IMG/VR virus record: IMGVR_UViG_3300042350_004528
Location: 62,001 to 126,000 of that record
DNA length: 64,000 nucleotides
Reading direction: 5' to 3' (one strand)
Shown here: positions 39,264 through 58,108 of the stretch, piece after piece
Numbering within the stretch: position 1 is the stretch's first letter
Layout: every line of letters starts with the position of its first letter
The notes under the pieces: generated by a model
Seen by the model: the letters and a program-made list of their open reading frames with translations, nothing else
Database searches by the model: none
Told to the model about the DNA's origin: nothing
Program-made: the position numbers and the translations under genes

Positions 39264-39935
39264 ATGGATACTTTTTCAATAACAATTGCTTTCTCAACGA
39301 GAAAAATAAATCAAGAGTATGTTGAACATGTTAAAAAATCATGTGCATGCCCAGATTTAGAGTTGTTGGTTTATGAAAACAATGGTGATAAAAGTTTAAC
39401 TGAAATTTATAATGAAGTTTTAAAAACAGCAAAAAATGATATCATTGTTTTCTGTCATGATGATTTAATTTTTGATACACCTTATTGGGGTAGAAAATTA
39501 GTTAAACATTTCAAAAGAAACCCAGATTACGGTATAATTGGAATTGCTGGTACCAACAATTTAATAAATGGTAGGTGGTGGTCGTTAAGGGAATCAATGC
39601 ACGGCATTGTCAATCATACGGATGGTAATAGAAAATGGACAAGTATGTTCTCTCAACCACAAGGCAATAAAATAAAACAAATGGTTATACTTGATGGTTT
39701 GTTTTTTGCTGTTGATAAGACAAAAATTAAACATGGTTTTGATGAGGATTTTAATGGGTTTCATTTTTACGACTTATCATTTTGCATACCAAATCATTTA
39801 GATGGTGTTAAGATTGGTGTTATAACGGATATAATGATCACACACTTATCTGTTGGTATGACAAACCAAAAATGGGAAGATAATAAAAATTTATTGGAAA
39901 AAAAATATGCGGATAAGTTTCCGATGAGAATATGA
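39264..39935 (+). CDS. Glycosyltransferase family 2-like protein
   Basis: IYN...AKNDIIVFCHDD, LDGLFFA, FHFYDLSFC. Confidence 0.8.
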   Translation: MDTFSITIAFSTRKINQEYVEHVKKSCACPDLELLVYENNGDKSLTEIYNEVLKTAKNDIIVFCHDDLIFDTPYWGRKLVKHFKRNPDYGIIGIAGTNNLINGRWWSLRESMHGIVNHTDGNRKWTSMFSQPQGNKIKQMVILDGLFFAVDKTKIKHGFDEDFNGFHFYDLSFCIPNHLDGVKIGVITDIMITHLSVGMTNQKWEDNKNLLEKKYADKFPMRI

Positions 39936-40594
39936 AAAATATTAGTGGTTTAAAAAATATCCATGTGGGTGAAGATATCTACATTTTAGCATCTGGTAAA
40001 TCTGTTGATTTTTTTGATGAAGATTTTTTTGATGGTAAAATACTTATCGGTGTTAACCAAGCGTATAAATTTACTTGGTGTGATTACCTGGTTAGAAAAG
40101 AAGTTAAATTTATTAAACAGAGTATAGAAACAGATTCCGTTGTTATTGTTTCTGAGTACGATAGTGGTAATTTAAATTCTGGTGAACAAAAGTTAAATAC
40201 AAACAAAATTGATCACCCTAATTTATATTATTTTGAACACTTGGATAATCAACATGCAAGGCTTGACACATCTGTTTTTGGTACAGATAAAATTGTCGTT
40301 AGTTTCTCAACTATTACATCAGCCATACACATTGCAGCCTACATGGGCGCTAAAAACATTATTTTAATTGGTCATGATTGTGGTACGATTGATGGCGAAA
40401 TGACGTTTAAAGGGTATTATGATTCCATTAAAGATACACCATGGGTGAGCTGGGATCAGTATAAATCTTGGTTAAAAATAATTGAAGGGCAAACGATAGA
40501 AGTTAAAAAACAAGTAAAAAAACACTATGGTGCTAATGTTGTATCAATGCTACCGTTTGTTTCACTGAACCTAGAAAATCATTTATATTTGTGA
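39932..40594 (+). CDS. DUF115/Maf-like (sialyltransferase-fold) protein
   Basis: GEDIYILASGKS...IGVNQA...STITSAIHIAAYMGAKNIILIGHD. Confidence 0.7.
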   Translation: MKNISGLKNIHVGEDIYILASGKSVDFFDEDFFDGKILIGVNQAYKFTWCDYLVRKEVKFIKQSIETDSVVIVSEYDSGNLNSGEQKLNTNKIDHPNLYYFEHLDNQHARLDTSVFGTDKIVVSFSTITSAIHIAAYMGAKNIILIGHDCGTIDGEMTFKGYYDSIKDTPWVSWDQYKSWLKIIEGQTIEVKKQVKKHYGANVVSMLPFVSLNLENHLYL

Positions 40595-41223
40595 TAAAAT
40601 ACATTATACCAGCAAGACGAAACTCAAAAGGGTTCCCATTTAAAAATAGAAAATTAATAAATTATACGTTAGATAATTTACCAAAAAACGTATATGACGA
40701 TGTTATTTTAACTACCGATGATGAAAAGTTATTGGAAATTGGTTTAGAATATGGTATAAAATGTATTAATAGAAATCCAAGTTTAGCTTTAGATAAAACT
40801 TCAACTAAAGAAGTTATGGATGACCTAAAGTTTCAGGGTATTATTACTAACACAGACATTGTTGTTATGTTATATTTAACATATCCGCAAAGAAATTGGT
40901 TAGATATAACTAACGCTTTACAGTTTTTTGATAATAAAAATGCAAAAAGCCTTTTGTGTAAAAAAGAAATAACAACAACCCACCCATATTTATATTTACT
41001 TGAAGTTGGTGATTTTAAGGGTAAACAATTAATCCCCCACAATCTATACAGAAGGCAAGATTATCCAAAAGTTTTTGAAATATCTCACTTTATATCGATT
41101 TTTAAAGTCAGTGAACTCAAAAATTTAAATAATAATCTTTATAATAACGACACCGTTTTTTATCCAATTGATGATATAATTGATGTTGACACTGATAAAG
41201 ATTTAGAAAGGTTTTTAGAATAA
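40591..41223 (+). CDS. neuA: Acylneuraminate (CMP-nonulosonate) cytidylyltransferase
   Basis: IIPARRNSKGFPFKN, LTTDD, LYLTYPQR, IDVDTDKD; GTG start. Confidence 0.88.
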   Translation: MIKYIIPARRNSKGFPFKNRKLINYTLDNLPKNVYDDVILTTDDEKLLEIGLEYGIKCINRNPSLALDKTSTKEVMDDLKFQGIITNTDIVVMLYLTYPQRNWLDITNALQFFDNKNAKSLLCKKEITTTHPYLYLLEVGDFKGKQLIPHNLYRRQDYPKVFEISHFISIFKVSELKNLNNNLYNNDTVFYPIDDIIDVDTDKDLERFLE

Positions 41224-42374
41224 TGGGTATTTTTATAAAAAATAAAACAAAAAGGGTACAAAAAGATGACACAAAACAACCAGTGTTAACTAATACTGCA
41301 ACTAATAAATCTTTAATAGGTGAAGAGGTTGTCGTTGCTGAAAAAAAAGCAATAAAAAAAGGATTTGGGGATAAAAAAATTGTAAACAAAGAACCAGTAA
41401 AGGCCACAATTAATTCTGTGGCGGTTGGTAAAGAGGAAAAAAAGTCCGTGTTGTTATTTGAAAACAACGAAAAAAATGAACCGACCACAAATTCATTAAT
41501 TAATAAAATTAATAAATCTTCAGGTAGAAATTCAATTTTTGACAAAGTTGTTGCCCCAGAAATTAAAAATTCAAATGTAGCTAAATCAAATGACAAAGTT
41601 GTTAACGACATTTATGATAAAGCTAGAAAAAATATTAGTTTTATAAAAAATAAAAATAATAAGTACTATGATTTTGTTTTCACTAAAGGGTACATAAATG
41701 AAAAAGATATTAAACATGTTAACACTGAACTAGATAAACAATTAAATAATTTAAAAATAAATCCGTCAACAATGGATTTATACTTTTTTAAATCGTTTAT
41801 AAAAGATAAAACAATCGCTCTTATAGCTAACTCGTCTGATTTATTAAATAAAAAACTTGGTGCGGAAATAGATTCTCATGACATTGTAGTTAGATTTAAT
41901 TCATATAAAATATTAAAAGAGGATACTGGGGAAAAATTAACTATACATGTTAGCATTTATTTACAAAATGAAAATTTAAATAATTTTGCACCTATTAGAT
42001 TTATCCTTTCGGGTAATAAAATAAACTGGGCTAAAAAAATATTAACATTAAATAAGTTTAACCAATCTACAATATTAAAGTATAATCACCACTCAACATT
42101 ACCAGGTAATTTTAGAGACGATTCGCCAACCACAACGGGATTCGCCACCTTAATTTTACTACTTAAAATTGGTGGTTTTCAAAAAATTAATATGTTTGGT
42201 TTTGATTTTTATCAAAACGGTAATGATAGTTTATTTAGAACGGACGTTGGTATGGAATCCCCAATATCTACCGTTCATGATTATTTCTTCGAAAAAGAAT
42301 TTATGATGGAATATTCATATGAATATGACGATAAAAAAAATATAATTACTTTTTATGATTATAGCACATTTTAA
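41223..42374 (+). CDS. GT29-like sialyltransferase with a Lys-rich N-terminal extension
   Basis: Sialylmotif L (IALIANS..LL....G.EID.HD.VVRFN), motif S (PTTG...MFGFD) and VS (HxxxxE). Confidence 0.75.
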   Translation: MGIFIKNKTKRVQKDDTKQPVLTNTATNKSLIGEEVVVAEKKAIKKGFGDKKIVNKEPVKATINSVAVGKEEKKSVLLFENNEKNEPTTNSLINKINKSSGRNSIFDKVVAPEIKNSNVAKSNDKVVNDIYDKARKNISFIKNKNNKYYDFVFTKGYINEKDIKHVNTELDKQLNNLKINPSTMDLYFFKSFIKDKTIALIANSSDLLNKKLGAEIDSHDIVVRFNSYKILKEDTGEKLTIHVSIYLQNENLNNFAPIRFILSGNKINWAKKILTLNKFNQSTILKYNHHSTLPGNFRDDSPTTTGFATLILLLKIGGFQKINMFGFDFYQNGNDSLFRTDVGMESPISTVHDYFFEKEFMMEYSYEYDDKKNIITFYDYSTF

Positions 42375-43203
42375 AGAAACGCCAATAGCACATGCACCAG
42401 AAGCGATTAGTGATGTTATAAATAAATATACAGATCATAAATCGTATGTTTTTGGCTACGGTTACCCGAATAAAAAATTAATACCAAAAACCGATATACT
42501 CCATTTACATAATAAGGATAGAAATTATAATTTTAATAAAAAAGTAATACAGTATCATAGTGAACCTTTTAGGGTAACATTGGATGTAAAAACAAAAAAA
42601 TTAGTAATAGCTCAGTACCATGCAACCTTACCAGAATATAATAATTGTACCGTTGTTAGAAACCCAATTGACATTTATGATGTAAAATTTTTACCAAAAT
42701 ACCAAAATAAAAAAATAAGAATTGGTTATTCTCCGTCAACAGTCAGACCACTATCAATTTGGGCAGATAAAGGATATACTGAAACATATCCCATTTTACA
42801 AAAAATAAAATCTAAATACGGAAACTCCGTTGAAATTGATATAATTGTAAATGTTTCATTAGACGAATGTTTAAAAAGAAAATCTCTATGTAATATTTTT
42901 ATTGATGAAGTAAAAACAATATCATATCATAGATCTGGGTTAGAATCGTTATCAATGGGTATTCCAACAATATGTTCAATTGGCCCATCCGTTGAAAAAC
43001 TTTTATTAAATTCTTCTGGTGCGCCAAATAGCCCGTTTATTAATGTAAATCATAATCAGTTAGAAAAAAAACTAATTGAATTAATAAATTTGGGGGTGGG
43101 TAATTTGTTGGAAATTGGTTACAATAATAGACTTTGGATGGAAAAATATTGGTCACCAGATACTATCGCAAACGAATATATTGAAATATATAAAAAAATA
43201 TAA
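42355..43203 (+). CDS. Glycosyltransferase, GT-B-like
   Basis: IRIGYSPST...KG...IFIDE...GLESLSMGIP. Confidence 0.7.
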   Translation: MIIAHFKETPIAHAPEAISDVINKYTDHKSYVFGYGYPNKKLIPKTDILHLHNKDRNYNFNKKVIQYHSEPFRVTLDVKTKKLVIAQYHATLPEYNNCTVVRNPIDIYDVKFLPKYQNKKIRIGYSPSTVRPLSIWADKGYTETYPILQKIKSKYGNSVEIDIIVNVSLDECLKRKSLCNIFIDEVKTISYHRSGLESLSMGIPTICSIGPSVEKLLLNSSGAPNSPFINVNHNQLEKKLIELINLGVGNLLEIGYNNRLWMEKYWSPDTIANEYIEIYKKI

Positions 43204-43204
43204 A

Positions 43205-43876
43205 ATGAAAAAATATTCAATTATAATACCAACGATGTGGATGTCTAGTCATTTATTTAAAATGTTAGACTTTTATGAGGAAAATGAATTAATACAAGAG
43301 GTTATAATTATAGATAATGCGCCAGAAAAGGGGCAACCAATACCAAAACAATTAAGTAAGTTAAAACTACATACTAAGGGTAAAAACATATATGTTAACC
43401 CAGCCTGGAATTTTGGTGTTTCATTAGCAATTAGTGATTATATTATAATTGCTAATGATGATATATTATTTAATAAAAAAGATTTTGATGAGTTACTAAA
43501 TAAGTCTTTTGAGTTTTTAAACGAAAACACCATAATTGGCCCATCAATGTATTGTTTTAAACAAAATCCCGAGAATTATAGTTTGCGATATAATGGTTTA
43601 AAAATCGAAAAGCTTAATGTAGGATTTACTTATGGTTTTGGTACATTTATGATAATGAAAAAAAACTCTTATACAATAATACCAGATGATATTTTAATAT
43701 TTCATGGAGACGTCATTCAACACAGAACAAATGATGTGTTTTTATTTAGTGGTATTGAGATAGATACACCGATGAGCGTAACACTTAAAAGTGATCCACA
43801 AATACATAATTTAGCTAAATTAGACCACGCCAAATCATTAAAGTATGATGTCAAAAAATTAATTAAATTTAAATAA
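43205..43876 (+). CDS. Glycosyltransferase family 2
   Basis: YSIIIPT, IIIDN, NPAWNFG, IANDD; start moved to ATG 43205. Confidence 0.8.
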   Translation: MKKYSIIIPTMWMSSHLFKMLDFYEENELIQEVIIIDNAPEKGQPIPKQLSKLKLHTKGKNIYVNPAWNFGVSLAISDYIIIANDDILFNKKDFDELLNKSFEFLNENTIIGPSMYCFKQNPENYSLRYNGLKIEKLNVGFTYGFGTFMIMKKNSYTIIPDDILIFHGDVIQHRTNDVFLFSGIEIDTPMSVTLKSDPQIHNLAKLDHAKSLKYDVKKLIKFK

Positions 43877-44521
43877 ATGGCTAACGGAATTTACAAAATA
43901 ACAGAAGAATTTGAAAAAGCGTTAAGTGATTACACAGGCGCACCATATGTTGTTACATTAGATAACCAATCAAACGGTTTATTTTTATCATTATACTACG
44001 AAAATAATATTAAAAAAAGTATAACAACCCCAAAAATTACAATACCATCAAGAACATACCCATCGGTACCGTGTGAAATAATACACGCGGGCTTAAAAGT
44101 TGATTTTTATCCTATTGAGGGGACAAAATTAAAAGGCGCTTATGAATTAAAGGGTAGTAATGTCTGGGATTCCGCTTTAAGGTTTACCGCAAATATGTAT
44201 TTACCATCAACACATATGTGCATATCTTTTACGGGCCCATATAAACATTTTAAATTAAGTAAAGGAGGTGCTATTTTAACTGATAGCCATGAAGCTTATT
44301 TATGGTTTAAGAGGGCTAGATATAGTGGTAGGAGGGAATGCTCTTATCATGACGATCATTTTGATATGTTGGGTTGGAATTTTTATATGATGCCAGAATT
44401 AGCGGCACGTGGGTTGTTGTTAATGAATCAATTTTACAACATCGATGGCACAAAAAAAGAAAACGCGGATTTAGAATTACCATATCCAGATTTATCAAAG
44501 TTTGATATTTATAAACAATGA
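43877..44521 (+). CDS. DegT/DnrJ/EryC1/StrS-type sugar aminotransferase (short form)
   Basis: FEKALSDYTGAPY...SNGLFL, WDSA, SFTGPYKH...GGAIL, GWNFYM; only 214 aa. Confidence 0.8.
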   Translation: MANGIYKITEEFEKALSDYTGAPYVVTLDNQSNGLFLSLYYENNIKKSITTPKITIPSRTYPSVPCEIIHAGLKVDFYPIEGTKLKGAYELKGSNVWDSALRFTANMYLPSTHMCISFTGPYKHFKLSKGGAILTDSHEAYLWFKRARYSGRRECSYHDDHFDMLGWNFYMMPELAARGLLLMNQFYNIDGTKKENADLELPYPDLSKFDIYKQ

Positions 44522-45240
44522 AACACATAATTGTCTTTTTGGCTTATGAAAATTTTGATATTATTAAAAAATCATTTAATTCGTTAAAAAATTGCGATTC
44601 GGATTTTTTTATTATTGAAAATAACTCTAAAAATTCAAATATCATAAAAGAATTTTTTATAAATGAAAATTTAGTCGGGTATATTCAATTTATAGAAAAT
44701 GCTGCGGCAAATGCTGTAAATATTTTTATTAAAAAATATTATAACTTATTATCCCAATATGATTATGTGACAATAACTGATGGTGATTTATTTCTATATG
44801 ACGCAACAGAAACATTTGGTGAAATAATTTCATCGTTTAATCATAATAATTGTTATGTTTGTGGCGTTGCCTTATATAAAGGTAATTATTATGAAAATAC
44901 AACCAATAGAATTATTGGTACCGAATATTATATTGAACATATGTTAAGTAAGTCGGAACATAAATTAGAGGCAATAAAAGGTAGAACAGGTAATCATTTA
45001 TTGACCTTTAATAAAGAAAGTCTACACGTTATTAAAGACATCCATTATATTGATTCAAATATTTTTAAAAAAATAAAAGAGCTGGGTGGATCTTGTTATA
45101 GAACAACAAAAAATTTGGCCTATCATTTAACTTGGGATGTATATTTTGATGGTAATCCATATTATGAGAATAAAAAAAATAATTTAAAAGAAATCTGGTC
45201 ACAATCTGATTTTGATTTTAAATATAATGTTATTATATGA
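44518..45240 (+). CDS. Putative GT-A fold glycosyltransferase
   Basis: IIENNS, YVTITDGD, HLTWD; glycan-island context. Confidence 0.5.
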   Translation: MKHIIVFLAYENFDIIKKSFNSLKNCDSDFFIIENNSKNSNIIKEFFINENLVGYIQFIENAAANAVNIFIKKYYNLLSQYDYVTITDGDLFLYDATETFGEIISSFNHNNCYVCGVALYKGNYYENTTNRIIGTEYYIEHMLSKSEHKLEAIKGRTGNHLLTFNKESLHVIKDIHYIDSNIFKKIKELGGSCYRTTKNLAYHLTWDVYFDGNPYYENKKNNLKEIWSQSDFDFKYNVII

Positions 45241-45824
45241 AAAGAGCATTAATTGGTGCTGGTGGTTTTGCACGTGAAATTAAATCGCATATTGGTGATG
45301 AATCAATGATATGTTTTGTTGATGATAGTTACTATGTTGGTGATACCTATACGTTACCATTAAGTCACTTTAATCCAAATGAATATGAGGTATTGATTGC
45401 TATCGGAGACCCACGTGCAAGATATGAGATAAGTAATCGCTTACCTAAAGATACTAAATATTTTACGCATATTGATAAACGAGCAAATATATTAGATGAA
45501 AATATTGAAATTGGCGAGGGTAGTATTATTTGTGCTGGCTGCATATTAACAACAAATATTAAAATAGGTAAACATGCCCATTTAAATTTACAAACAACAA
45601 TCGGGCATGATACAACCATAGGTAACTTTTTTACAACAGCCCCTGGAGCAAAAATATCTGGTAATTGTGTAATACACGATTTAGTTTACATTGGGACAAA
45701 CGCTTCTGTTAGAGAAAAAATAACGATCCATAGCTTAACAACAATAGGTTTAAATGCTGGTGTGGTAAAAGATATAACTGAACCAGGTGTTTACGGCGGA
45801 ACGCCATGTAAAAAAATTAAATAA
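45237..45824 (+). CDS. NeuD/PglD-family sugar acetyltransferase (hexapeptide repeats)
   Basis: LIGAGGFARE, AIGDP..R, left-handed beta-helix repeats, YGGTP. Confidence 0.9.
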   Translation: MKRALIGAGGFAREIKSHIGDESMICFVDDSYYVGDTYTLPLSHFNPNEYEVLIAIGDPRARYEISNRLPKDTKYFTHIDKRANILDENIEIGEGSIICAGCILTTNIKIGKHAHLNLQTTIGHDTTIGNFFTTAPGAKISGNCVIHDLVYIGTNASVREKITIHSLTTIGLNAGVVKDITEPGVYGGTPCKKIK

Positions 45825-45825
45825 T

Positions 45826-46440
45826 ATGCAAAATACAGTAGAATCTTTAAATTTAATTAAAAAAATATCAGATGAGATTAATAATATGACATTTCATCAC
45901 CATTATTATGTTTTATATGATATAGCTAAAGAATTTGGAACCTCACCAATTAACTATGTTGAAATCGGTTGTTATGCTGGGGGCTCCGCTTGTCTTATGC
46001 TACAAAGGCCAAATACTAACGTAATTAGTATTGATTTAGGTGTACCAATTAAACCAGAAGTAGTTAAAAATAATGTAAAAAAATTAAATATTTTAAATAA
46101 CAATTACAATTATATACAAGGTAACTCACAAAAAAATGAAACGGTTAGTGAGTTAAAAAAATTGGTTGAATTGATAGATATTTTATTTATTGACGGTGAC
46201 CATAGTTATAATGGTGTTATTAACGATTTTAATTTGTATTCTAAAATGGTAAAACCAGGTGGTTATATTATTTTTGATGATTATAACGACAAACAACATA
46301 GCCCTCAAGTTAAAGTAGCTGTTGACGACTTATTAAAAAATAACTATGAGTATGAAATATTTGGTACATTACCAAATATTTTTGGCGCTAGGCCTAGTGA
46401 ATTAAAAGAGGGTAATTGTTTTATAATTAAAAAAAAATAA
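45826..46440 (+). CDS. Class I SAM-dependent methyltransferase (likely glycan O-methyltransferase)
   Basis: YVEIGCYAGGS, LFIDGDHSY, GGYIIFDDY; start moved to ATG 45826. Confidence 0.85.
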   Translation: MQNTVESLNLIKKISDEINNMTFHHHYYVLYDIAKEFGTSPINYVEIGCYAGGSACLMLQRPNTNVISIDLGVPIKPEVVKNNVKKLNILNNNYNYIQGNSQKNETVSELKKLVELIDILFIDGDHSYNGVINDFNLYSKMVKPGGYIIFDDYNDKQHSPQVKVAVDDLLKNNYEYEIFGTLPNIFGARPSELKEGNCFIIKKK

Positions 46441-46441
46441 T

Positions 46442-47122
46442 ATGTTAGCAATTGTCATATCCACGTATCAAAGAAATGATGGTACAACACCCATTCATTT
46501 AACCAAAGCATTAACTTCGATTAAAAATCAAACATACCAAAATTATATGGTATTTTTAATTGGCGATCGCTATGATAATAATGATGAGTTTATAAGATTA
46601 GCGACATCAATAATTGATTCTGATAAAATGGTGTTTGTTAATTTACCAAATGCTGTTGAAAGAGAAAAATATCCGTTTGGTGATGTACGTCTGTGGTCAT
46701 CTGGCGGCGTAAATGCAGTTAATTTCGGTATTAAACTTGCTTTGGAACAAAATTATAATTATATTTGTAGACTAGATCACGATGACTGGTGGGCGCCAGA
46801 ACATTTGGATTTAATAAAAGATAAATTAAACGAAGATCATATAATAATAGCAACGAAAGGTATGCATTTCACTGATAAAATATTACCTGTAAAAGATAGT
46901 AACCCATTCTACCCTAAAAGTTCAGATTTATTACATTCGTCTGTTTGTATAAATTTTAAAAAAACTCCGTTAAGGTATCGCGATGTTTTTGCCGAAGAAG
47001 GTAGACCTTATGCGGCTGATGCTGATTTATGGGATAGATTGTCTTATTATATGGTAAAAAACAATAAAACAGGTTATTTAATAAACAAGGTAACGTGTTA
47101 TCATAGTAATGAAAGAAGATGA
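46442..47122 (+). CDS. Glycosyltransferase family 2
   Basis: IVISTYQR, SIKNQTY, RLDHDDWW. Confidence 0.85.
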   Translation: MLAIVISTYQRNDGTTPIHLTKALTSIKNQTYQNYMVFLIGDRYDNNDEFIRLATSIIDSDKMVFVNLPNAVEREKYPFGDVRLWSSGGVNAVNFGIKLALEQNYNYICRLDHDDWWAPEHLDLIKDKLNEDHIIIATKGMHFTDKILPVKDSNPFYPKSSDLLHSSVCINFKKTPLRYRDVFAEEGRPYAADADLWDRLSYYMVKNNKTGYLINKVTCYHSNERR

Positions 47123-47126
47123 CTAA

Positions 47127-47972
47127 ATGAAAAAGGTAAAAATAATAGCGGAAATAGGGATTAATCACAATGGCGATATTGAAATTGCCAAACAATTAAT
47201 TATGGTGGCGAAAGCGGCTGGATGTGATTACGTAAAATTTCAGAAGAGAAACCCAGATGTGTGTGTTCCAGAAGACCAAAAAAATAAAATTCGCCAAACG
47301 CCATGGGGTGAAATGACATATCTGGAATACAAATGGAGAACTGAATTTAATTATGAACAATACTCTGAAATTGATGAGTTTTGCAAACAAATCGGTATAA
47401 AATGGTTTGTGTCTGTTTGGGACAAAGATAGCGTAGAGTTTATGGATATCTTTAGAAGATTAGGTAAAGCCTACGATGGTACAATGAAAATACCATCAGC
47501 GTTGATTACGGACTTAGAACTTTGTAAATACGCAAGAGCCAATTGTGATAAATTAATTATTTCAACTGGAATGAGTACTGAAAAAGAGGTTAGAGCCTGT
47601 ATTAGTACCTGCAATCCAGATGTTGTTATGCACACAAACTCAACTTACCCATGTCCTGTTGAAGAATTAAATTTGAATTACATAAATTGGCTTAAAAGTT
47701 GGTACCCAGGCTTAGATATAGGATATAGTGGTCACGAGTATGGTTTAGTTACAACATTTGCAACAATACCTATGGGTGTCACTTGGATTGAAAGACATAT
47801 CACCTTGGATAGAAATATGTGGGGTTCCGATCACTCAGCTTCAATAGAACCATCTGGTTTATTCAAGCTAGTTAAAGGTATACGTGACATTGAGTCATCT
47901 TTAAGTATCCCAATGAAACCTAGAGAAGTTTTTGGCGGGGAATTAGCTAAACAAAAAAGCTTGAGGAAATAA
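47127..47972 (+). CDS. neuB: Nonulosonic acid synthase (NeuB/PseI/LegI/Kdn-9-P synthase family); lacks the C-terminal AFP-like domain
   Basis: IIAEIGINHNGD, VKFQ, IISTGM, MHTNSTYP, GYSGHE, IERHITLD...GSDH. Confidence 0.95.
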   Translation: MKKVKIIAEIGINHNGDIEIAKQLIMVAKAAGCDYVKFQKRNPDVCVPEDQKNKIRQTPWGEMTYLEYKWRTEFNYEQYSEIDEFCKQIGIKWFVSVWDKDSVEFMDIFRRLGKAYDGTMKIPSALITDLELCKYARANCDKLIISTGMSTEKEVRACISTCNPDVVMHTNSTYPCPVEELNLNYINWLKSWYPGLDIGYSGHEYGLVTTFATIPMGVTWIERHITLDRNMWGSDHSASIEPSGLFKLVKGIRDIESSLSIPMKPREVFGGELAKQKSLRK

Positions 47973-48298
47973 TGAACATTTACGTAGACGTAGATAACAC
48001 AATAACCGAAACTTCTGGTATGGATTATCAGAATGCTAAACCTATATACGCGAAAATCTCAATCATAAATAAATTATACGATTTAGGCCATACAATTACT
48101 TATTGGACAGCTAGGGGTTCCATTTCAGGTATTGACTATTATTCACTCACGAAATTACAACTAGATTCGTGGGGTGTAAAATATCACAATTTCATGGTTG
48201 GAAAACCAGCTTTTGATCTTTTAATTGATGATAAAACAATAAACAACATTAATGAAAACCTTTTTACATGGGCAACCAAAGAAGAAGAAAAAAACTAA
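47972..48298 (+). CDS. Capless HAD phosphatase (capsule-biosynthesis type)
   Basis: YVDVDNT (DxD), WTARG, GKP, LIDDK. Confidence 0.8.
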   Translation: MNIYVDVDNTITETSGMDYQNAKPIYAKISIINKLYDLGHTITYWTARGSISGIDYYSLTKLQLDSWGVKYHNFMVGKPAFDLLIDDKTINNINENLFTWATKEEEKN

Positions 48299-49727: not shown

Positions 49728-50804
49728 ATGGAAAAAATAAACGAGACATTAAAAAACATCGAAAGTGCGATCGAAAAAGTAAAAAACAAAGAAAGTAAAA
49801 TCGTATTTTTATCACCAGACACAAAAGGTACCGCTAGAGCGAGTGTGTCGTACATTTACCGACAAGCCTTAATATTAAAAAATGCGGGCTACACAATTAA
49901 CATTTTACATGAAAAAAATGACTACATCAAAGTTGGTAGTTGGTTGGGTGAGGATTACGACAATTTAGAGCACAAGTCAATCGAAAACAATGATTTGACT
50001 GTCGGGCCTCAGGATATTATTATTGTTCCTGAAATATATGGAAATGTTTTTGAACAAATATTACAACTACCTGTACAAAAAGTTATTCTTGCCCAATCTT
50101 ATGATTATTTGTTAGATAGTTTTTCACCTGGTAAATCCTGGTTAGATTTTGATGTTATGACTTGTTTGACAACATCAAAAACTTTATCCGATACTATAAG
50201 CGAATTAGTACCTTCAAGTAATATTGAATTTGTTAACCCAGGAATCGCTGAATGTTTTTCACCAAGCGAAAAACCGCAAATGCCTGTCATTGCAATTCAT
50301 TGTAGAGATCAAAGAAAAGCGGCAAAAATAATTAAAAGTTTTTATCTAAAATACCCATTATATCGTTTTATTTCTTTTAAAGATATGCACGGAATGACTG
50401 AAAGTGATTTTGCAAAAAATTTAAAAGAATGTGCGTTATCTGTTTGGGTTGACGATGATAGTACATTTGGTACATTTCCTGTTGAATCTATGAAATGCAA
50501 TGTTCCTGTTATCGGTAAAGTGCCTAACATTATTCCAGAGTGGATGAATGATGACAACGGTATTTGGGTTTACGATGAAAATCAAATTGCTGATTTAGCA
50601 TTTAATTATATAAAAAATTGGATGGAAGATAGCTTACCAGAAAACCTATTAAAAGTAAGTGAAACTGTTGATGGTAAGTACACCATGGAATTATTTGAAA
50701 AAGCAACAATTGAGGTCTATGACACAATGTTTAAAAAGTGTCTGGATAGACTTAATAGAATAAAAGAAACCTTTGAAAAAACACTAGAAACTAATGAAAA
50801 CTAA
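49728..50804 (+). CDS. Glycosyltransferase, GT-B-like
   Basis: IIIVPEIYG, VWVDDDSTFGTFPVESMKCNVPVIG. Confidence 0.75.
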   Translation: MEKINETLKNIESAIEKVKNKESKIVFLSPDTKGTARASVSYIYRQALILKNAGYTINILHEKNDYIKVGSWLGEDYDNLEHKSIENNDLTVGPQDIIIVPEIYGNVFEQILQLPVQKVILAQSYDYLLDSFSPGKSWLDFDVMTCLTTSKTLSDTISELVPSSNIEFVNPGIAECFSPSEKPQMPVIAIHCRDQRKAAKIIKSFYLKYPLYRFISFKDMHGMTESDFAKNLKECALSVWVDDDSTFGTFPVESMKCNVPVIGKVPNIIPEWMNDDNGIWVYDENQIADLAFNYIKNWMEDSLPENLLKVSETVDGKYTMELFEKATIEVYDTMFKKCLDRLNRIKETFEKTLETNEN

Positions 50805-51618
50805 TATAGACTTAACAGTTGTTATCCCCGTACACTCAATTGCGGATGAAAAATTTAATGAATTATTGAGCGGTGCGTTAAATAGTATTGAAAATAATAA
50901 TATACACCCATCAAACGTAATGATTGTTAGATGCGGTTGTTCTGAAGTTAAAGAAGTTTTGAAAAAATTTGATTTTTCAAAATATTCTTTTCATGTAACA
51001 TTACTTGAAAATAAAACAGGAAAATCATTTCAAAACCAAATAAACGAAGCTGCAAAAAATATAGAAACAAAATATTTTAGCTTTTTAGAATTTGATGACG
51101 AGTATTCAGTTAATTGGTTTAAAAATGTTAAACAATATACGGAAGCTTACCCTGAAATTGACATGTTTTTACCCATTATAACCGATGTTACAAATGAAAA
51201 TAATTTTGTTGGATTTACTAATGAAGCAGCTTGGGCTTATAATTTTTCTGATACATTAGGCCAGATTGACCATGAGGTTTTAAATGAATTCCCAAACATC
51301 AATCCAGATGGTATGGTTGTTAAAACCGAAGTCTTTAAAAATATCGGCGGTTACAAATCTTCGATTAAACTCACATTTAATTATGAATTTTTACTAAGAT
51401 TTACTAAAGGTGGTAGAAATATTATGGTTATACCTAAAATTGGTTATAAACATGTCAATATGCGACCAGGTTCTTTATTCTGGGAATATAAAAATAGTGA
51501 AATCCCAGAAATGAGAATTACACCAGAAGAAGCTAAGTTTTGGATGGAAGCTGCTAAAAAAGAATTTTTTTATACTGAAGATAGACCAATAACATACGAA
51601 GAAAATGAAACAGCTTAA
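50794..51618 (+). CDS. Glycosyltransferase family 2
   Basis: LTVVIPVH, QINEA, SFLEFDD, YEFLLR. Confidence 0.8.
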   Translation: MKTNIDLTVVIPVHSIADEKFNELLSGALNSIENNNIHPSNVMIVRCGCSEVKEVLKKFDFSKYSFHVTLLENKTGKSFQNQINEAAKNIETKYFSFLEFDDEYSVNWFKNVKQYTEAYPEIDMFLPIITDVTNENNFVGFTNEAAWAYNFSDTLGQIDHEVLNEFPNINPDGMVVKTEVFKNIGGYKSSIKLTFNYEFLLRFTKGGRNIMVIPKIGYKHVNMRPGSLFWEYKNSEIPEMRITPEEAKFWMEAAKKEFFYTEDRPITYEENETA

Positions 51619-52357: not shown

Positions 52358-52738
52358 ATGATTAACAATCAAAGAAAGAAAAAAATTGATGTTTCTGAAG
52401 AAAGCATGAAAGAACTCATGCAAGAAACATATAATGAAATCGTTGATGAAAGAAATAAAGCCTTAACTGCTTATAAAAAATTCAGTAAAGACATTAATGA
52501 AAATTCAGATATAGCTTTAGTTGGTAAGATTACAAATGATCTTTTAAAAATAATTGATGGAACCATCGAAAAAAAACTAAGGTTGATTAAAATTCAAAGT
52601 GATATTTTGTATAAAAACGGTAAAGGTGGATCCGCCGATAATGGTGCTCCGATGGTTATTACAGAAGAAGATAGAAAATGGGCCGAGGAGTTTTTAAAAA
52701 AACAAAATAACAATGAAAATGAAAAAGAATACGAATAA
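52358..52738 (+). CDS. Hypothetical helical late protein (possible small terminase)
   Basis: GATATTTATA at 52333-52342 puts the start at ATG 52358; small-terminase role is unverified. Confidence 0.5.
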   Translation: MINNQRKKKIDVSEESMKELMQETYNEIVDERNKALTAYKKFSKDINENSDIALVGKITNDLLKIIDGTIEKKLRLIKIQSDILYKNGKGGSADNGAPMVITEEDRKWAEEFLKKQNNNENEKEYE

Positions 52739-54685: not shown

Positions 54686-54898
54686 ATGAAAAACGAAAAG
54701 TTACAAGAAATTATAGATAATTGCAAAAACAAACCAAATAAAGATTTGGCAAATGTTTTAGTTACGCTTGAAGTTGATTTTAATAATATTAAATCAACAA
54801 TACTAGAATTAACAGAAACATTAAAAGAACTTGAAATTACATATGATACTGTATACGATGAATTACAAAAGAGATTAAAATTTGAAGATAAAAAATGA
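54686..54898 (+). CDS. Hypothetical coiled-coil protein
   Basis: Start moved to ATG 54686 (MKNEKLQEII...). Confidence 0.6.
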   Translation: MKNEKLQEIIDNCKNKPNKDLANVLVTLEVDFNNIKSTILELTETLKELEITYDTVYDELQKRLKFEDKK

Positions 54899-56529
54899 AG
54901 GCCGATTATAAAATAGGTGTATGTTTTGACAATGAAGATCCTAAGAATTTAGGTAGGATCAGAGCAATTCCTATTGATATTTTGGGTAAATTTGCGACAT
55001 TAAAAGACATAAAGGATTATATAAAAAGAGAGGATGATAAAGCCATAGCCGCTCTAAAATATAATCCTTGGTATTCGACTAAATATCAAAATTTTAAAGA
55101 AAAAGACAAATATGTTTGCGAACCATTTTTACCAAAAAATATTGGTGTTACGCCAAATACGGGTCAATTAGTCAAAATAATAACATATGAGGATTTAGAT
55201 CAAAAACTTGAATTTATTGGGCCGTATACGATAGATCAAATAACTCTTACTGAAGAATATAGAAATGTCGTAAGTAATTTACAAAAAACTTTACCAATAT
55301 CAGATGTTTTACCCAAAAAGGGTAAAACATTTATATCTGGGTACTCAAACGAACAAATTATTCTGGGTGATAATGAATTTTTAATTAGATTAGATCATAT
55401 AAATGGCGGAGAAAAAACGAGAAAAACCAGTTATCCGTTTATACAATTATCACAATTTTTTAATAGTTACGATGTTAAAGAAAAAACAACAACTATTATA
55501 GAAACACCAGACATTCCAATTGATTTTATTTGTGAGTTATTTTTACAATATTCACCAAAAAAAAATTCGAATGAAAAAAACTTTACAGCTGAGGTTATCT
55601 TATATGATGCTTCAAAGCAAATAAATAGAAGAGGTGAGATAGGTTTAACCAAAGACACCTACTCCCCTGCGACACAATATATAACAAATTCATATACAAA
55701 TTATGTTGTTAAACATTATATAAACTCATCTAATGGGGCTGAATTTATAAAAATTATTGAAGATATAATATCTGGGTATAATTCTGGTGGTTTAATAAAA
55801 TACTACGATGTAAATAACACATCATCAGAACAAAAAACTGAAAATAATAGTGCAACAATAATTGTATATAACAATGTACCAGCTACGCCAAACGCTGGGG
55901 GTGCTTTAGGCGACTCAAATATTGTATCAAACATTAAAAGTTGGTTATTTAGACTAACTCCTGGTACAAAATTAACTAATTACCTTGGCAATCTAACGCA
56001 ACCTAATTTACCCGCTAATAATATTGAAACTATTAGATACAAAGATTATGTTAAATTAGATTCGTTAATATCAAAGTATACCGTTGATAAAAAATATGGT
56101 AACTTGGCGATCAATAATTCAAAAACAACAACCGTCAAAAAACCAGTCGCTGAATCTTTAAACAAACCACAATCGGTACATACAATTTATTCTGACAAAT
56201 TTTTATTTTTAAGTAGTTTAAATTCTTTAAATATTATTGATAATTTAAATTTTGACGGACTACCATCCGATAAAATAGCTGAAATTTTAAGCGGATTAAA
56301 TCAAAATGCGAGAACATATGGGTTTATTAGGGGTGAAAAATTAATGGAATTACTTAATGAGATTTTAGATATGTTTAAAAAACATGGTCATCAAGCTGGT
56401 GTAGACCCAACAGCCTCAATAATTCAATCAACACAAGAAGCTGTTGAAAATATAAAAAAGAAAATAAAGGATGAATTAAAGGAAGGTCAAAATAATGTGA
56501 TAATCAATCATAACTTAAGACTTAATTAA
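54895..56529 (+). CDS. Baseplate central spike (gp5/gpV/VgrG-like)
   Basis: N-terminal OB-fold signature DNEDPKNLGRIRA...PFLP...P..G..V; C-terminal RGEKL...HGH (HxH apex motif). Confidence 0.7.
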   Translation: MKADYKIGVCFDNEDPKNLGRIRAIPIDILGKFATLKDIKDYIKREDDKAIAALKYNPWYSTKYQNFKEKDKYVCEPFLPKNIGVTPNTGQLVKIITYEDLDQKLEFIGPYTIDQITLTEEYRNVVSNLQKTLPISDVLPKKGKTFISGYSNEQIILGDNEFLIRLDHINGGEKTRKTSYPFIQLSQFFNSYDVKEKTTTIIETPDIPIDFICELFLQYSPKKNSNEKNFTAEVILYDASKQINRRGEIGLTKDTYSPATQYITNSYTNYVVKHYINSSNGAEFIKIIEDIISGYNSGGLIKYYDVNNTSSEQKTENNSATIIVYNNVPATPNAGGALGDSNIVSNIKSWLFRLTPGTKLTNYLGNLTQPNLPANNIETIRYKDYVKLDSLISKYTVDKKYGNLAINNSKTTTVKKPVAESLNKPQSVHTIYSDKFLFLSSLNSLNIIDNLNFDGLPSDKIAEILSGLNQNARTYGFIRGEKLMELLNEILDMFKKHGHQAGVDPTASIIQSTQEAVENIKKKIKDELKEGQNNVIINHNLRLN

Positions 56530-56542
56530 AATATTTATATTT

Positions 56543-58108
56543 ATGGGAATTTACCGCACATATTTTGACAAGAATAATACGATAGTAAAAGATTCTTTAG
56601 TTAATACAGGCAGAAACCAGGTTTCTGAGCTATACTTTGGTGATAAAGTAAGTAGATTTTTATTTTACTGTTCATTTGATGAGATAAAAAAGAAAGTTGA
56701 AAACAAAGAAATTATCATCAATAATGATGTTAAACATTATTTAAGAATAAAAAATACATCAAATTTTGATGTGTCACCTTTTTTATCCGATAGTAACAAT
56801 CTAGTTTTTACGGATAAATATAGATCCTCTTCATTTGATTTAGAATTAAAACCAGTTAAAGAATTTTGGGATGAGGGTATGGGGTATGATTTCCAACTTA
56901 GCCCATTTTCGAGACCCCAAGACCGCGATTTTAATGAAGAACCGTCAAACTGGTTTAATGGTACCTATGTTAATGAATTTTTAACACCTGGTGTTACATT
57001 AGGTAATAGATTAGCCCTACAACATTTCGATAGGGGTAATGAGGATGTTTTAATGGACATCACTGATTTCGTTAATGATGTGATAACTACTGGGACAACA
57101 ACAGGTATAACAACTGGAATCACAACAGGTATAACAACTGGGATTACTACGGGCATCACCACTGGAATCACAACTGGGGTTACCAGCGGGATTACCACTG
57201 GAATCACAACAGGTATAACAACTGGGATTACCACTGGAATCACAACAGGTATAACAACTGGTATTACTACGGGAGTAACAAGTAGTTACAATGGTTTTTG
57301 TTTAAAATACACAGACCCGTATGAATCTTTGGTTTTTGATGATTCTAGAGCGTATGTTTTAGGGTTATTTACAAAATACACACAAACATTTTTTGAACCG
57401 TTTATTGAAACACACTACAATGATCATATTGTCGATGATAGAGTTGATTTCTTTTTAAATAAATTAAATAGATTGTATCTTTATGTTAATATTGACGGAA
57501 AACTGACTAACTTGGATGAATTACCAACATTTACAATAAATGGGGTTGTAACAATAAACCCATTTATAGTTAAACAACAAACAAAGGGTGTTTATTACGT
57601 TGAATTTTTCGCATCAAGTGAGGTGTATGACTCTTATACTGAATATAAAGATGTTTGGTCTAACATAAAAATTAATGGTGTTAACAGACCAGATATAAGA
57701 TTACGCTTCGTGCCAAAAGAAGACAACGATTACTACCAACTCGGTTCTGATGTCTCGGAACCAATTAGATATGGGATATCAGTTAGCGGTATTAAAAGAG
57801 AAGAAAAGGTTAATCAAGGTGAAAAAAGACGTGTCAACGTTCACCTCAGAAAGCCATATACAGTTGAACAACAAGATGTAAAAACAAATGTATATTACAA
57901 ATTGTATATTAAACAAGGGCCAAATGTTATTGATATACTTGATTGGCAACCAGTTAACAAACTATATAATTCGAATACCTTTAATATCGATACAACCTGG
58001 TTGGTGCCACAAGTATATTACGTTGACATTAAAGTCGAAAGAAATGATGAAATTAATGTCTATAACGAAGAATTAAAATTCACTGTATTAAGTAAATTAA
58101 AAGGATAA
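56543..58108 (+). CDS. Structural protein with a (I/V)TTG x17 repeat and a C-terminal Ig-like region
   Basis: 521-aa ORF after the spike gene; beta-rich flanks. Confidence 0.7.
   Translation: MGIYRTYFDKNNTIVKDSLVNTGRNQVSELYFGDKVSRFLFYCSFDEIKKKVENKEIIINNDVKHYLRIKNTSNFDVSPFLSDSNNLVFTDKYRSSSFDLELKPVKEFWDEGMGYDFQLSPFSRPQDRDFNEEPSNWFNGTYVNEFLTPGVTLGNRLALQHFDRGNEDVLMDITDFVNDVITTGTTTGITTGITTGITTGITTGITTGITTGVTSGITTGITTGITTGITTGITTGITTGITTGVTSSYNGFCLKYTDPYESLVFDDSRAYVLGLFTKYTQTFFEPFIETHYNDHIVDDRVDFFLNKLNRLYLYVNIDGKLTNLDELPTFTINGVVTINPFIVKQQTKGVYYVEFFASSEVYDSYTEYKDVWSNIKINGVNRPDIRLRFVPKEDNDYYQLGSDVSEPIRYGISVSGIKREEKVNQGEKRRVNVHLRKPYTVEQQDVKTNVYYKLYIKQGPNVIDILDWQPVNKLYNSNTFNIDTTWLVPQVYYVDIKVERNDEINVYNEELKFTVLSKLKG
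57083..57286 (+). repeat. 12-bp coding tandem repeat, 17 units (ITTG/TTTG/VTSG/VTSS)
   Basis: Read directly; wobble positions vary between units. Confidence 0.97.

What the first reader, a model, noticed from the sequence alone, without database searches (positions are those of the whole stretch)
57083..57286. Mucin-like (ITTG)x17 tract in a baseplate-region protein, with diversified codons
Seen: 17 four-residue units, about half Thr, organised as 8 ITTG-type units, VTSG, 7 units, VTSS. Gly and Thr codons vary between units (ggt/gga/ggg/ggc), which suggests the peptide is what is selected rather than recent DNA slippage; the 12-bp period allows in-frame length change. Inference: a dense O-glycosylation acceptor stalk for the phage glycan island, or a Thr-faced beta-solenoid (ice/carbohydrate binding) or flexible linker.
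Basis: partly seen in the sequence, partly recalled or inferred. Interest (0 to 1): 0.66.

Follow-up and report, generated by a model that had tools for sequence, protein, structure and literature searches.

The report
Expandable threonine-rich loop in phage tail protein
A conserved, probably tail-tip protein of an uncultured 299-kb freshwater phage carries a 17-copy Ile-Thr-Thr-Gly repeat, and this one surface loop of a sugar-binding-type domain has expanded and shrunk repeatedly in related phages; whether the loop is glycosylated is still untested.

Summary
Window 57083-57286 is 17 in-frame 12-nt units, 33 of 68 residues Thr, inside a 521-aa ORF (56543-58108, +). The genome is a 298.8-kb T4-like jumbo phage from lakes.

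What I add:
- **Protein.** It belongs to a large unnamed family (more than 940 homologues). It has an N-terminal DNRLRE/CBM96-like beta-sandwich and two Ig-like domains, and it lies directly downstream of a gp5/gpV-like baseplate hub gene.
- **Site.** The tract replaces a short conserved turn (TG-xT-N, 9-11 aa in most relatives). The window ties for the longest loop seen (72 aa).
- **Independent growth.** The loop expanded at least three separate times.
- **Recent change.** Two proteins 98% identical differ by exactly two units.
- **Turnover.** Each lineage has its own multi-unit DNA block duplications: 36 nt here, 48 or 60 nt elsewhere.
- **Selection.** Synonymous sites between units are nearly randomised (pS 0.72, pN 0.09), so the peptide is what is selected.
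- **Fold.** AlphaFold gives no confident structure for the tract.
- **Glycan genes.** The glycan island is real. But glycosyltransferase genes and a swappable sugar cassette sit at the same place in relatives with minimal loops, so their presence does not predict tract length.

Glycosylation is neither supported nor refuted. Interest is moderate.

The parts
56543..58108 (+). ORF of 521 aa (P0001) that carries the tract. It belongs to a large unnamed family of aquatic T4-like jumbo phages.
   Evidence: ORF list and translation. 940 homologues at E<=1e-3 among the 8000 candidates scored, typical length 455-475 aa, all named 'hypothetical protein' or unnamed. 473 IMG/VR stretches encode a relative. 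No hit in 50,697 deposited phage records.
57083..57286 (+). The tract: 17 units of 12 nt encoding [I/T/V]-T-[T/S]-[G/S], residues 181-248.
   Evidence: AlphaFold pLDDT is below 50 for residues 198-245.
57191..57262 (+). Most recent visible event: a 36-nt (3-unit) block duplicated in tandem. Units 10-12 and 13-15 are 35/36 identical.
   Evidence: Unit table and self-similarity by shift. TRF period-36 row.
56543..57421 (+). N-terminal DNRLRE/CBM96-like beta-sandwich domain (aa 1-293). The tract is inserted after helix 174-183 and before the last strands.
   Evidence: VIA-align gives Z 17.6 (rmsd 2.7, 168 aligned) to 8wab_B, a chondroitin-sulfate-binding CBM, and Z 14.3 to 7vbo_A, the alginate-binding CBM96. 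31 of 99 family members hit NCBIfam NF033679 DNRLRE_dom (best E 1.2e-6, below the curated cut-off).
57434..58105 (+). Two C-terminal Ig-like / macroglobulin-like beta-sandwich domains (aa ~298-400 and ~405-521).
   Evidence: Model secondary structure. VIA-align Z 8-10 to macroglobulin, filamin and Ig-type domains. Foldseek returns generic tandem-Ig hits.
54895..56529 (+). Upstream neighbour (544 aa): probable gp5/gpV-type baseplate hub or central spike with an N-terminal OB-fold.
   Evidence: The nearest named Atlas cluster is Phage_base_V (features 0.93). The AlphaFold model has pLDDT 80. Weak but repeated structural hits: P1 baseplate, cyanophage A-1(L) baseplate, phiKZ central spike (Z 5.9-6.2), and BFVD 'Gp5/Vgr OB-fold', 'baseplate hub' and 'central spike' proteins (E 1e-3 to 3e-2). 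No Pfam or PHROG hit.
49728..51618 (+). Two GT-like genes (358 aa GT1-like, below threshold; 274 aa GT2), conserved next to the structural block in almost all relatives.
   Evidence: Pfam. Synteny in about 60 loci, whatever the loop length.
39264..48005 (+). Conserved GT2_5 gene (39264-39935) followed by a swappable sugar cassette. Here it holds Maf/MptE-like, CMP-transferase, GT29-like, DegT, PglD-like, GT2 and NeuB genes, a nonulosonic-acid toolkit. It ends before PhoH (48268-49005).
   Evidence: Pfam. Other cassettes occupy the same slot in relatives.

Best explanation
The tract is a lineage-specific expansion of one surface loop of a DNRLRE/CBM96-type beta-sandwich domain. The protein is conserved and is probably associated with the tail tip or baseplate hub.

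The ancestral loop is a short Thr/Gly turn (TG-xT-N). Its 'TG' seed has been multiplied into [I/V]TTG units by duplication and deletion of blocks of 2-5 units (24-60 nt), through replication slippage or unequal recombination. Selection keeps the peptide unit intact while synonymous sites drift. That drift limits single-unit slippage.

The likely product is a hydrophilic, Thr-lined arm of adjustable length (9 to 72 residues) that projects from the sugar-binding-type domain. I infer that its length tunes how the virion protein meets the host's surface polysaccharide (reach, spacing or shielding). This would explain why it is a hot spot between otherwise near-identical phages.

Shown: the anatomy, the site of insertion, the recurrent independent expansions, the recent two-unit change, the block-duplication mode, and selection at the peptide level.

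Inferred: that the protein is in the virion, that the domain binds carbohydrate, and that loop length matters for host interaction. Whether the Thr residues carry glycans is open and is treated as the first rival; it is compatible with this explanation.
For: - **Site.** In 191 aligned homologues the loop between invariant N178 and G251 is 9-11 aa in 112 of them. There is a class at about 25 aa and a tail up to 72 aa (window and L004).
- **Independent expansions.** On a tree built without the loop, the window/L003/L004 clade has 68-72 aa. L015 (60) is sister to P0008 (24) with support 99. P0021 (57) is sister to P0027 (34) in a distant clade. P0026 (9) is nested among 25-aa loops, which indicates contraction.
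- **Recent change.** P0002 and P0185 are 98.1% identical and differ by exactly two units.
- **Mode of change.** Each long tract has its own higher-order DNA period: 36 nt in the window, 48 nt in L003 and L015, 60 nt in L004.
- **Peptide selection.** pS is 0.715 and pN is 0.090 among units.
- **Domain identity.** Z 17.6 and 14.3 to solved CBMs, sub-threshold DNRLRE hits in 31 of 99 members, core pLDDT above 90 and pTM 0.80.
- **Context.** The gene sits immediately downstream of a gp5/gpV-like gene in a gene block conserved across the family.
Against: - No experimental evidence shows that the protein is in virions.
- No family member reaches the curated DNRLRE cut-off (best 27.4 bits against 34).
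- A shared fold does not prove that the domain binds carbohydrate.
- AlphaFold gives no confident conformation for the tract, so 'arm' is a description, not a structure.
- Short-read contigs break inside the tract, so copy-number variation within one population could not be measured.
- A fitness effect of length is inferred only from recurrence and conservation.
Confidence: 0.6

Rival explanations
1. O-glycan acceptor stalk. The Thr residues of the tract would be O-glycosylated in the host cytoplasm by phage-encoded transferases. In this phage the sugar might be a nonulosonic acid made by the NeuB / CMP-transferase / Maf-like cassette. More units would mean more glycan on the tail protein. This reading can coexist with the best explanation.
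For: - The tract is 48.5% Thr, has a hydrophobic I/V before each TT, is surface-placed and is predicted without fixed structure.
- Three GT-like genes and a sugar cassette lie 5-17 kb upstream on the same strand, and two of the GT-like genes sit inside the conserved structural block.
- The cassette contains the set of genes used for flagellin-type O-linked nonulosonic acid glycosylation: NeuB (E 3e-60), CTP_transf_3, DegT, PglD-like and MptE/Maf-like.
- No other protein of the 299-kb genome has such a tract.
- Precedents: mycobacteriophage capsid and tail-tube glycosylation, as summarised in PMC12619734, and cytoplasmic flagellin O-glycosylation (PMC7591256, abstract only).
Against: - GT genes and a GT-rich cassette occur at the same place in relatives with 9-25-aa loops, including complete genomes G002 and G007.
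- NeuB occurs with loops from 19 to 72 aa and is absent from the fully read island of a phage with 12 units. No specific link between island and tract length was found.
- There is no proline, and Gly is strictly periodic with beta-branched residues. This is unlike typical mucin domains.
- The MptE-like hit is below Pfam's threshold (28.7 bits against 34.6).
- Phage GTs often act on DNA or on host surface glycans instead.
Confidence: 0.3
2. Tolerated slippage product without a function of its own. The loop would simply be a permissive site where a slippage-prone TG seed runs away, and the conserved peptide unit would reflect only which residues are tolerated there.
For: - The site is a loop that can be as short as 9 aa, so the tract is dispensable for the fold.
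- Lengths differ widely between close relatives.
- Block duplications are evident.
Against: - Long tracts of 60-72 aa persist in four lineages that have diverged to 78-92% protein identity, while their DNA repeats have turned over completely.
- pN/pS is about 0.13, with synonymous sites close to random.
- The same unit arose in at least three independent expansions.
Confidence: 0.15
3. Ordered Thr-faced beta-solenoid or beta-ribbon, binding ice, water or carbohydrate. The units would stack into a regular beta structure, for example three or four units per turn, or a long two-stranded ribbon.
For: - The tract is strictly periodic, has beta-branched I/V/T with Gly at every fourth position, and contains no Pro.
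- Short strands are predicted at both ends of the tract (190-193 and 239-242), as at the base of a hairpin.
Against: - pLDDT is 41-49 and no secondary structure is predicted across residues 198-238.
- The super-period of the DNA differs between lineages (3, 4 or 5 units), so no constant turn size is indicated.
- The motif is TT, not the TxT of known ice-binding solenoids.
- Both ends of the tract must return to the same point of the host domain.
Confidence: 0.07

Closest known systems
CBM96 / DNRLRE domain (TM6-N4 of alginate lyase Dp0100, PDB 7VBO; chondroitin-sulfate-binding CBM, PDB 8WAB)
   Same: The beta-sandwich fold covers residues 1-293 (Z 14.3 and 17.6). There is weak sequence similarity to the DNRLRE model over its C-terminal half. 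BFVD also returns phage proteins named CBM96 and pectate lyase.
   Different: No member reaches the curated cut-off. The protein has no catalytic domain, is part of a phage structural block, and carries two Ig-like domains. The helix-to-strand loop holds a repeat tract of up to 72 aa, which is not described for CBM96 in PMC9971899.
Mycobacteriophage virion O-glycosylation (Freeman et al. 2023, as summarised in PMC12619734)
   Same: Phage-encoded glycosyltransferase genes sit beside structural genes, and a Ser/Thr-rich exposed segment on a virion protein is the presumed acceptor.
   Different: In mycobacteriophages the acceptor is a C-terminal extension of the capsid and tail-tube subunits, and modification was shown by mass spectrometry. 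Here the segment is an internal, strictly periodic loop of a different protein, and no modification has been shown.
Flagellin O-glycosylation with pseudaminic or legionaminic acid by Maf-type transferases (e.g. PMC7591256 for the cytoplasmic pathway)
   Same: The cassette has NeuB-type synthase, CMP-transferase, aminotransferase, acetyltransferase and an MptE/Maf-like gene. In that system the acceptors are exposed Ser/Thr residues modified in the cytoplasm.
   Different: No flagellin is involved. The Maf-like hit is below threshold. The cassette is not linked to tract length across relatives.
In-frame minisatellites / contingency repeats in surface proteins, and Pro/Thr linkers beside CBMs in glycoside hydrolases (my own knowledge)
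   Same: These are also in-frame tandem repeats with rapid copy-number change between strains, or Thr-rich low-complexity segments next to a carbohydrate-binding module.
   Different: This tract is a loop within the module, not a linker between modules. It has no proline, and its synonymous sites are scrambled, which should slow slippage rather than promote it.
'Moraphages', freshwater jumbo phages of 200-307 kb with four core glycosyltransferase groups (PMC12619734)
   Same: Habitat (lakes), genome size (298.8 kb) and several GT genes conserved across the clade.
   Different: I could not compare sequences, so whether this phage is a moraphage is unverified. That paper does not describe this protein or the tract.

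Membership tests
CBM96 / DNRLRE domain | Beta-sandwich fold superposable on solved members | tested here: met
   Z 17.6 (rmsd 2.7, 168 of 176 residues) to 8wab_B and Z 14.3 (153 aligned) to 7vbo_A. These stand well above the next unrelated rows.
CBM96 / DNRLRE domain | Score above the curated cut-off of NCBIfam NF033679 (34 bits) | tested here: not met
   31 of 99 members hit with best E 1.2e-6. The best score printed, among the ten members scanned individually, was 27.4 bits. P0001 itself does not hit.
CBM96 / DNRLRE domain | Binds a polysaccharide in a groove | not testable with these tools
   This needs binding assays. Residue-level equivalence to the groove residues of 7VBO could not be derived from the outputs available.
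Mucin-like O-glycosylated (PTS) domain | Very high Ser/Thr content in a tandem repeat | tested here: met
   33 Thr and 4 Ser in 68 residues.
Mucin-like O-glycosylated (PTS) domain | Proline-rich, extended, non-periodic low complexity | tested here: not met
   No Pro at all. Gly sits at every fourth position and I/V/T at the first.
Mucin-like O-glycosylated (PTS) domain | Glycans actually attached | not testable with these tools
   Requires mass spectrometry of the protein.
Phage virion glycosylation system (mycobacteriophage type) | GT genes adjacent to structural genes | tested here: met
   GT2 (24.0 bits, cut-off 23.3) and a GT1-like gene (below cut-off) at 49.7-51.6 kb lie within the conserved block that ends with the target.
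Phage virion glycosylation system (mycobacteriophage type) | Presence of the acceptor segment follows presence of the GTs across relatives | tested here: not met
   The GT genes and sugar cassettes are present whatever the loop length, from 9 to 72 aa.
Flagellin-type nonulosonic acid O-glycosylation | NeuB-type synthase plus CMP-activating enzyme | tested here: met
   NeuB E 3.1e-60 and CTP_transf_3 E 3.3e-11.
Flagellin-type nonulosonic acid O-glycosylation | Maf (MptE/DUF115) transferase | tested here: inconclusive
   PF01973 scores 28.7 bits, below the cut-off of 34.6. The protein is 220 aa, much shorter than Maf proteins (Maf length from my own knowledge).
Thr-faced beta-solenoid ice-binding proteins | Confidently predicted or solved solenoid with TxT ladders | tested here: not met
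   pLDDT is 41-49 and no strands are predicted across the tract. The motif is TT, not TxT.
In-frame variable minisatellite | Copy number differs between near-identical strains, in whole units | tested here: met
   P0002 (490 aa) and P0185 (482 aa) are 98.1% identical and differ by one gap of exactly two units. Sister taxa have loops of 24 vs 60 aa and 34 vs 57 aa.
gp5 / gpV baseplate hub (for the upstream neighbour) | N-terminal OB-fold matching solved central spikes | tested here: inconclusive
   Z 5.9-6.2 to the P1, A-1(L) and phiKZ baseplate/spike chains, many weak BFVD hits named Gp5/Vgr OB-fold, and Atlas feature score 0.93 to Phage_base_V. No Pfam hit.

The most novel reading that the evidence does not exclude
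The tract could be a phage-encoded, length-adjustable acceptor that is O-glycosylated in the host cytoplasm with a phage-made nonulosonic (sialic-acid-like) sugar through the Maf-like transferase. This would coat a baseplate or tail-tip protein with up to about 30 acidic sugars. As far as I know (not searched), it would be the first virion protein of a phage shown to carry such sugars. The swappable cassette would then set the sugar, and the repeat number would set the dose.
Probability: 0.12. Interest if true: 0.8.

Novelty: new variant of a known kind. Interest (0 to 1): 0.45.

Why it matters
The protein family is a core, unnamed gene of abundant uncultured aquatic jumbo phages. This work gives it a first domain assignment: a sugar-binding-type module plus Ig-like domains, next to the baseplate hub.

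It also pinpoints one loop as a natural length-variation hot spot. A loop that has been expanded independently several times with the same peptide unit is a good candidate for a determinant of host-surface interaction. It also lies close to a swappable sugar-biosynthesis cassette.

If the loop proves to be glycosylated, it would extend phage virion glycosylation beyond mycobacteriophages and to sialic-acid-like sugars. If it does not, it remains a clear natural example of an in-frame minisatellite kept stable by codon scrambling.

Tried and rejected
- **Sequence searches.** Pfam and PHROGs on the target and its neighbours gave nothing useful. The UPF0158 hit (E 2.8e-4, no stretch passing on its own) and the FliH hits are treated as noise or low-complexity artefacts. 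tblastn against 50,697 phage records found no match. A profile search against PDB sequences found nothing meaningful.
- **Whole-protein fold searches.** Foldseek against the PDB gave only generic tandem-Ig hits. The ESM Atlas searches, by sequence features and by fold, returned only the protein's own unnamed family.
- **Reads.** Logan contigs of three lake metagenomes match the flanks perfectly but break inside the tract at 57142 and 57197-57232, so they give no copy-number information. Two short contigs from a metatranscriptome lie on the gene, but this does not prove transcription.
- **NeuB against tract length.** At first this looked associated: NeuB was present in the six phages checked with loops of 38 aa or more, except P0021, and absent from eight with loops of 25 aa or less. 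More sampling showed NeuB with loops of 19 and 29 aa, and the carriers are phylogenetically clustered. I rejected it as a specific link.
- **gp5-type triple beta-helix (VxGxxxxx repeats).** Considered and rejected. The tract is a loop whose two ends return to the same domain, and its period is 4, not 8 (my own knowledge of gp5).
- **Bacteroidota general O-glycosylation motif D-(S/T)-(A/I/L/V/M/T).** Considered and rejected. There is no Asp in the units, and that system acts outside the cytoplasm (my own knowledge).
- **Antisense ORF 56965-57243 (92 aa).** Judged a by-product of a stop-free repeat.
Full report
**1. The observation**

Window 57083-57286 is 204 nt, exactly 17 units of 12 nt. It lies in frame inside ORF 56543-58108 (+), which encodes 521 aa (P0001). 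The units read ITTG, TTTG, six ITTG, VTSG, seven ITTG, VTSS, and 33 of the 68 residues are Thr. Tandem Repeats Finder reports the 12-nt period and also a stronger 36-nt period (score 193). A degenerate two-unit pattern occurs 11 times in the window, all inside the tract, and never in 100 shuffles. An independent IMG/VR contig (L002) carries the identical tract.

**2. Codon diversity and DNA history**

The 14 ITTG units exist in 10 DNA versions, and almost all differences are at third codon positions. Over all unit pairs pS is 0.715 and pN is 0.090. Gly codons in the tract (GGT 31%) also depart from those of neighbouring genes (GGT 64%).

Recent DNA events are visible as well. Units 10-12 and 13-15 are 35/36 identical, and a two-unit block recurs three times, the third copy with one change. 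Other long tracts show the same behaviour with different block sizes: 48 nt in L003 and L015, and 60 nt in L004. So the tracts turn over by duplication of multi-unit blocks, independently in each lineage.

**3. The genome**

The window is bases 62001-126000 of a single 298,833-bp virus record with 34% G+C. The genome has:
- a T4-type large terminase (60525-62309) and portal (62545-63999);
- a gp23-type capsid gene 5 kb beyond the window;
- a sheath-like gene at window ~16.9 kb on the minus strand;
- a gp25-like gene 17 kb before the window.

The best terminase match among deposited phages is only 29.6% identical. The stretch is found in at least 19 lake and freshwater metagenome runs from many studies. 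It may belong to the freshwater jumbo 'moraphages', which share its genome size and habitat and have several core glycosyltransferases (PMC12619734). I could not compare sequences to check this.

**4. The protein**

P0001 has no Pfam or PHROG assignment and no match in deposited phage records. It does have more than 940 metagenomic homologues, typically 455-475 aa long, and 473 IMG/VR stretches encode a relative.

An AlphaFold model built with 99 homologues is confident for the core (mean pLDDT 85, pTM 0.80) but not for the tract (pLDDT 41-49 over residues 198-245). Residues 1-293 superpose on solved carbohydrate-binding modules of the CBM96/DNRLRE type: Z 17.6 to 8wab_B and Z 14.3 to 7vbo_A. 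In addition, 31 of 99 family members give sub-threshold hits to the NCBIfam DNRLRE model (best E 1.2e-6), covering its C-terminal half. CBM96 is a calcium-containing beta-sandwich with a shallow glycan groove (PMC9971899). Residues ~298-400 and ~405-521 are Ig-like or macroglobulin-like sandwiches.

By fold the N-domain is CBM96-like. By the curated sequence cut-off it is not a certified member.

**5. Where the tract sits, and how it varies**

In the family alignment the tract occupies the loop between the conserved helix (…DITDFVN…) and the conserved strand (…Y-x-G-F-C-L-K-Y…). In most relatives this loop is just TG-xT-N. Loop length across 191 sequences is 9-11 aa in 112, about 25 aa in 14, and rises to 72 aa in the window and L004.

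On a tree built without the loop columns:
- the window/L003/L004 clade has 68-72 aa;
- L015 (60 aa) is sister to a 24-aa protein;
- P0021 (57 aa) is sister to a 34-aa protein in a distant clade;
- a 9-aa loop is nested among 25-aa loops.

That makes at least three independent expansions and at least one contraction. Two proteins that are 98.1% identical differ by exactly two units. The unit is always [I/V/T]-T-[T/S]-G. The tree was made with FastTree and several forks are unresolved. The claims above rest only on the starred sister pairs.

**6. Gene context**

The target is the last gene of a block conserved across the whole family: dUTPase, GT2_5, a variable cassette, PhoH, a 211-aa gene, a GT1-like gene, a GT2 gene, a weakly sigma-like 237-aa gene, a 135-aa gene, a 645-aa gene, a 90-aa gene, a 544-aa gene, then the target.

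The 544-aa neighbour is probably a gp5/gpV-type hub or spike. Its nearest named Atlas cluster is Phage_base_V (0.93). Its model (pLDDT 80) gives weak but repeated hits to P1, A-1(L) and phiKZ baseplate or spike chains (Z about 6) and to BFVD proteins named Gp5/Vgr OB-fold, baseplate hub and central spike. Each hit is weak on its own. Together they give moderate support.

So 'baseplate-region protein' is partly supported. The wedge gene gp25 is far away, however, and the packaging and head genes follow directly.

**7.

The island is real. GT2_5 is followed by Maf/MptE-like (below threshold), CMP-transferase, GT29-like, DegT, PglD-like, GT2 and NeuB genes. After PhoH come the GT1-like and GT2 genes.

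It does not track the tract:
- The three conserved GT-like genes are present in nearly all relatives, whatever their loop length.
- The slot between GT2_5 and PhoH holds different sugar cassettes in different phages. A complete genome with a 25-aa loop has GT4, GT2s, a carbamoyltransferase, a methyltransferase, a nucleotidyltransferase and a UDP-GlcNAc 2-epimerase. A phage with a 13-aa loop has a sugar dehydrogenase and an epimerase.
- NeuB is found with loops of 19, 29, 38, 44, 60, 68, 72 and 72 aa.
- NeuB is absent from four genomes at least 91% complete with loops of 9-25 aa.
- NeuB is also absent from the fully read island of the phage with a 57-aa, 12-unit tract.

The positive prediction, that length follows the island, is not borne out.

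**8. What it most likely is**

I conclude that the tract is a recurrently expanded, peptide-selected surface loop of a sugar-binding-type domain in a conserved, probably tail-tip or hub-associated protein. It is made and remade by block duplication and deletion. It most likely acts as an adjustable Thr-lined arm in the encounter with host surface polysaccharide.

The anatomy and the evolutionary behaviour are shown. Virion location, carbohydrate binding and any effect of length are inferred.

O-glycosylation of the Thr residues remains a live and compatible possibility (about 0.3). In its favour are the Thr density, the hydrophobic residue before each TT, the GT genes inside the structural block, and the precedents in mycobacteriophages and flagellins. 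Against it are the lack of any link between island and tract, the absence of proline, and the strict Gly periodicity.

A Thr-faced solenoid has no support from the model. A functionless slippage product is hard to reconcile with the conserved unit and the persistence of long tracts while their DNA turns over.

**9. Limits**

- Copy-number variation within a single population could not be measured, because short-read contigs break inside the tract.
- Transcription is not shown.
- The residue-level relation of the loop to the CBM96 ligand groove could not be derived from the outputs.

Noticed in passing
window 39932-48005 (between GT2_5 at 39264-39935 and PhoH at 48268-49005): This is a swap-prone sugar-biosynthesis cassette. 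Here it is a nonulosonic-acid toolkit (Maf/MptE-like, CMP-transferase, GT29-like, DegT, PglD-like, GT2, NeuB). Relatives carry entirely different cassettes at the same slot, for example carbamoyltransferase plus UDP-GlcNAc 2-epimerase, pyruvyl transferase plus a Caps_synth GT, or a sugar dehydrogenase plus epimerase.
   Followed up: partly
L084:15570-19478: The portal gene of a close relative (the P0002 phage) is 1302 aa and carries an intein (Intein_splicing plus LAGLIDADG_3) inside Portal_T4. The window's own portal ORF runs off the end of the window, so its full length was not seen; in close relatives (L085, L098-L101) the uninterrupted portal is about 600-620 aa.
   Followed up: no
window 51621-52334: A 237-aa protein conserved in the block has a weak Sigma70_r2 hit (E 0.006). 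It may be a late-transcription sigma-like factor placed between the GT genes and the structural genes.
   Followed up: no
window 28153-28202 and around 5215-5246 (minus strand): Two other proteins carry small Thr/Gly patches. One is a perfect 24-nt x 2.1 repeat encoding TGATSGTT-type units in the 491-aa ORF 27693-29168. The other is an ITGITTGTTNG patch in the 2485-aa ORF 3173-10630 (-). A genome-wide scan found no other long tract.
   Followed up: partly
window 52738-54675: A 645-aa conserved protein has a Gly run (GGGGGCGG) and hydrophobic segments and has no family hit. It could be a tape-measure-like or hub-associated protein just upstream of the gp5-like gene.
   Followed up: no
window 57083-57286: Gly codon usage inside the tract (GGT 31%, GGA 31%, GGG 31%) departs from that of neighbouring genes (GGT 64%). 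This could reflect selection for DNA heterogeneity that damps slippage, but the sample is only 16 codons.
   Followed up: partly
window 56600-56640 and 57625-57808: Two short contigs of a freshwater metatranscriptome run (X20) are identical to parts of the gene. DNA carry-over cannot be excluded.
   Followed up: no
window 29634-32840: The family-B DNA polymerase contains a DUF7831 insert (E 4e-43). It is conserved in relatives, and the gene order from the polymerase to the target is syntenic across the clade.
   Followed up: no
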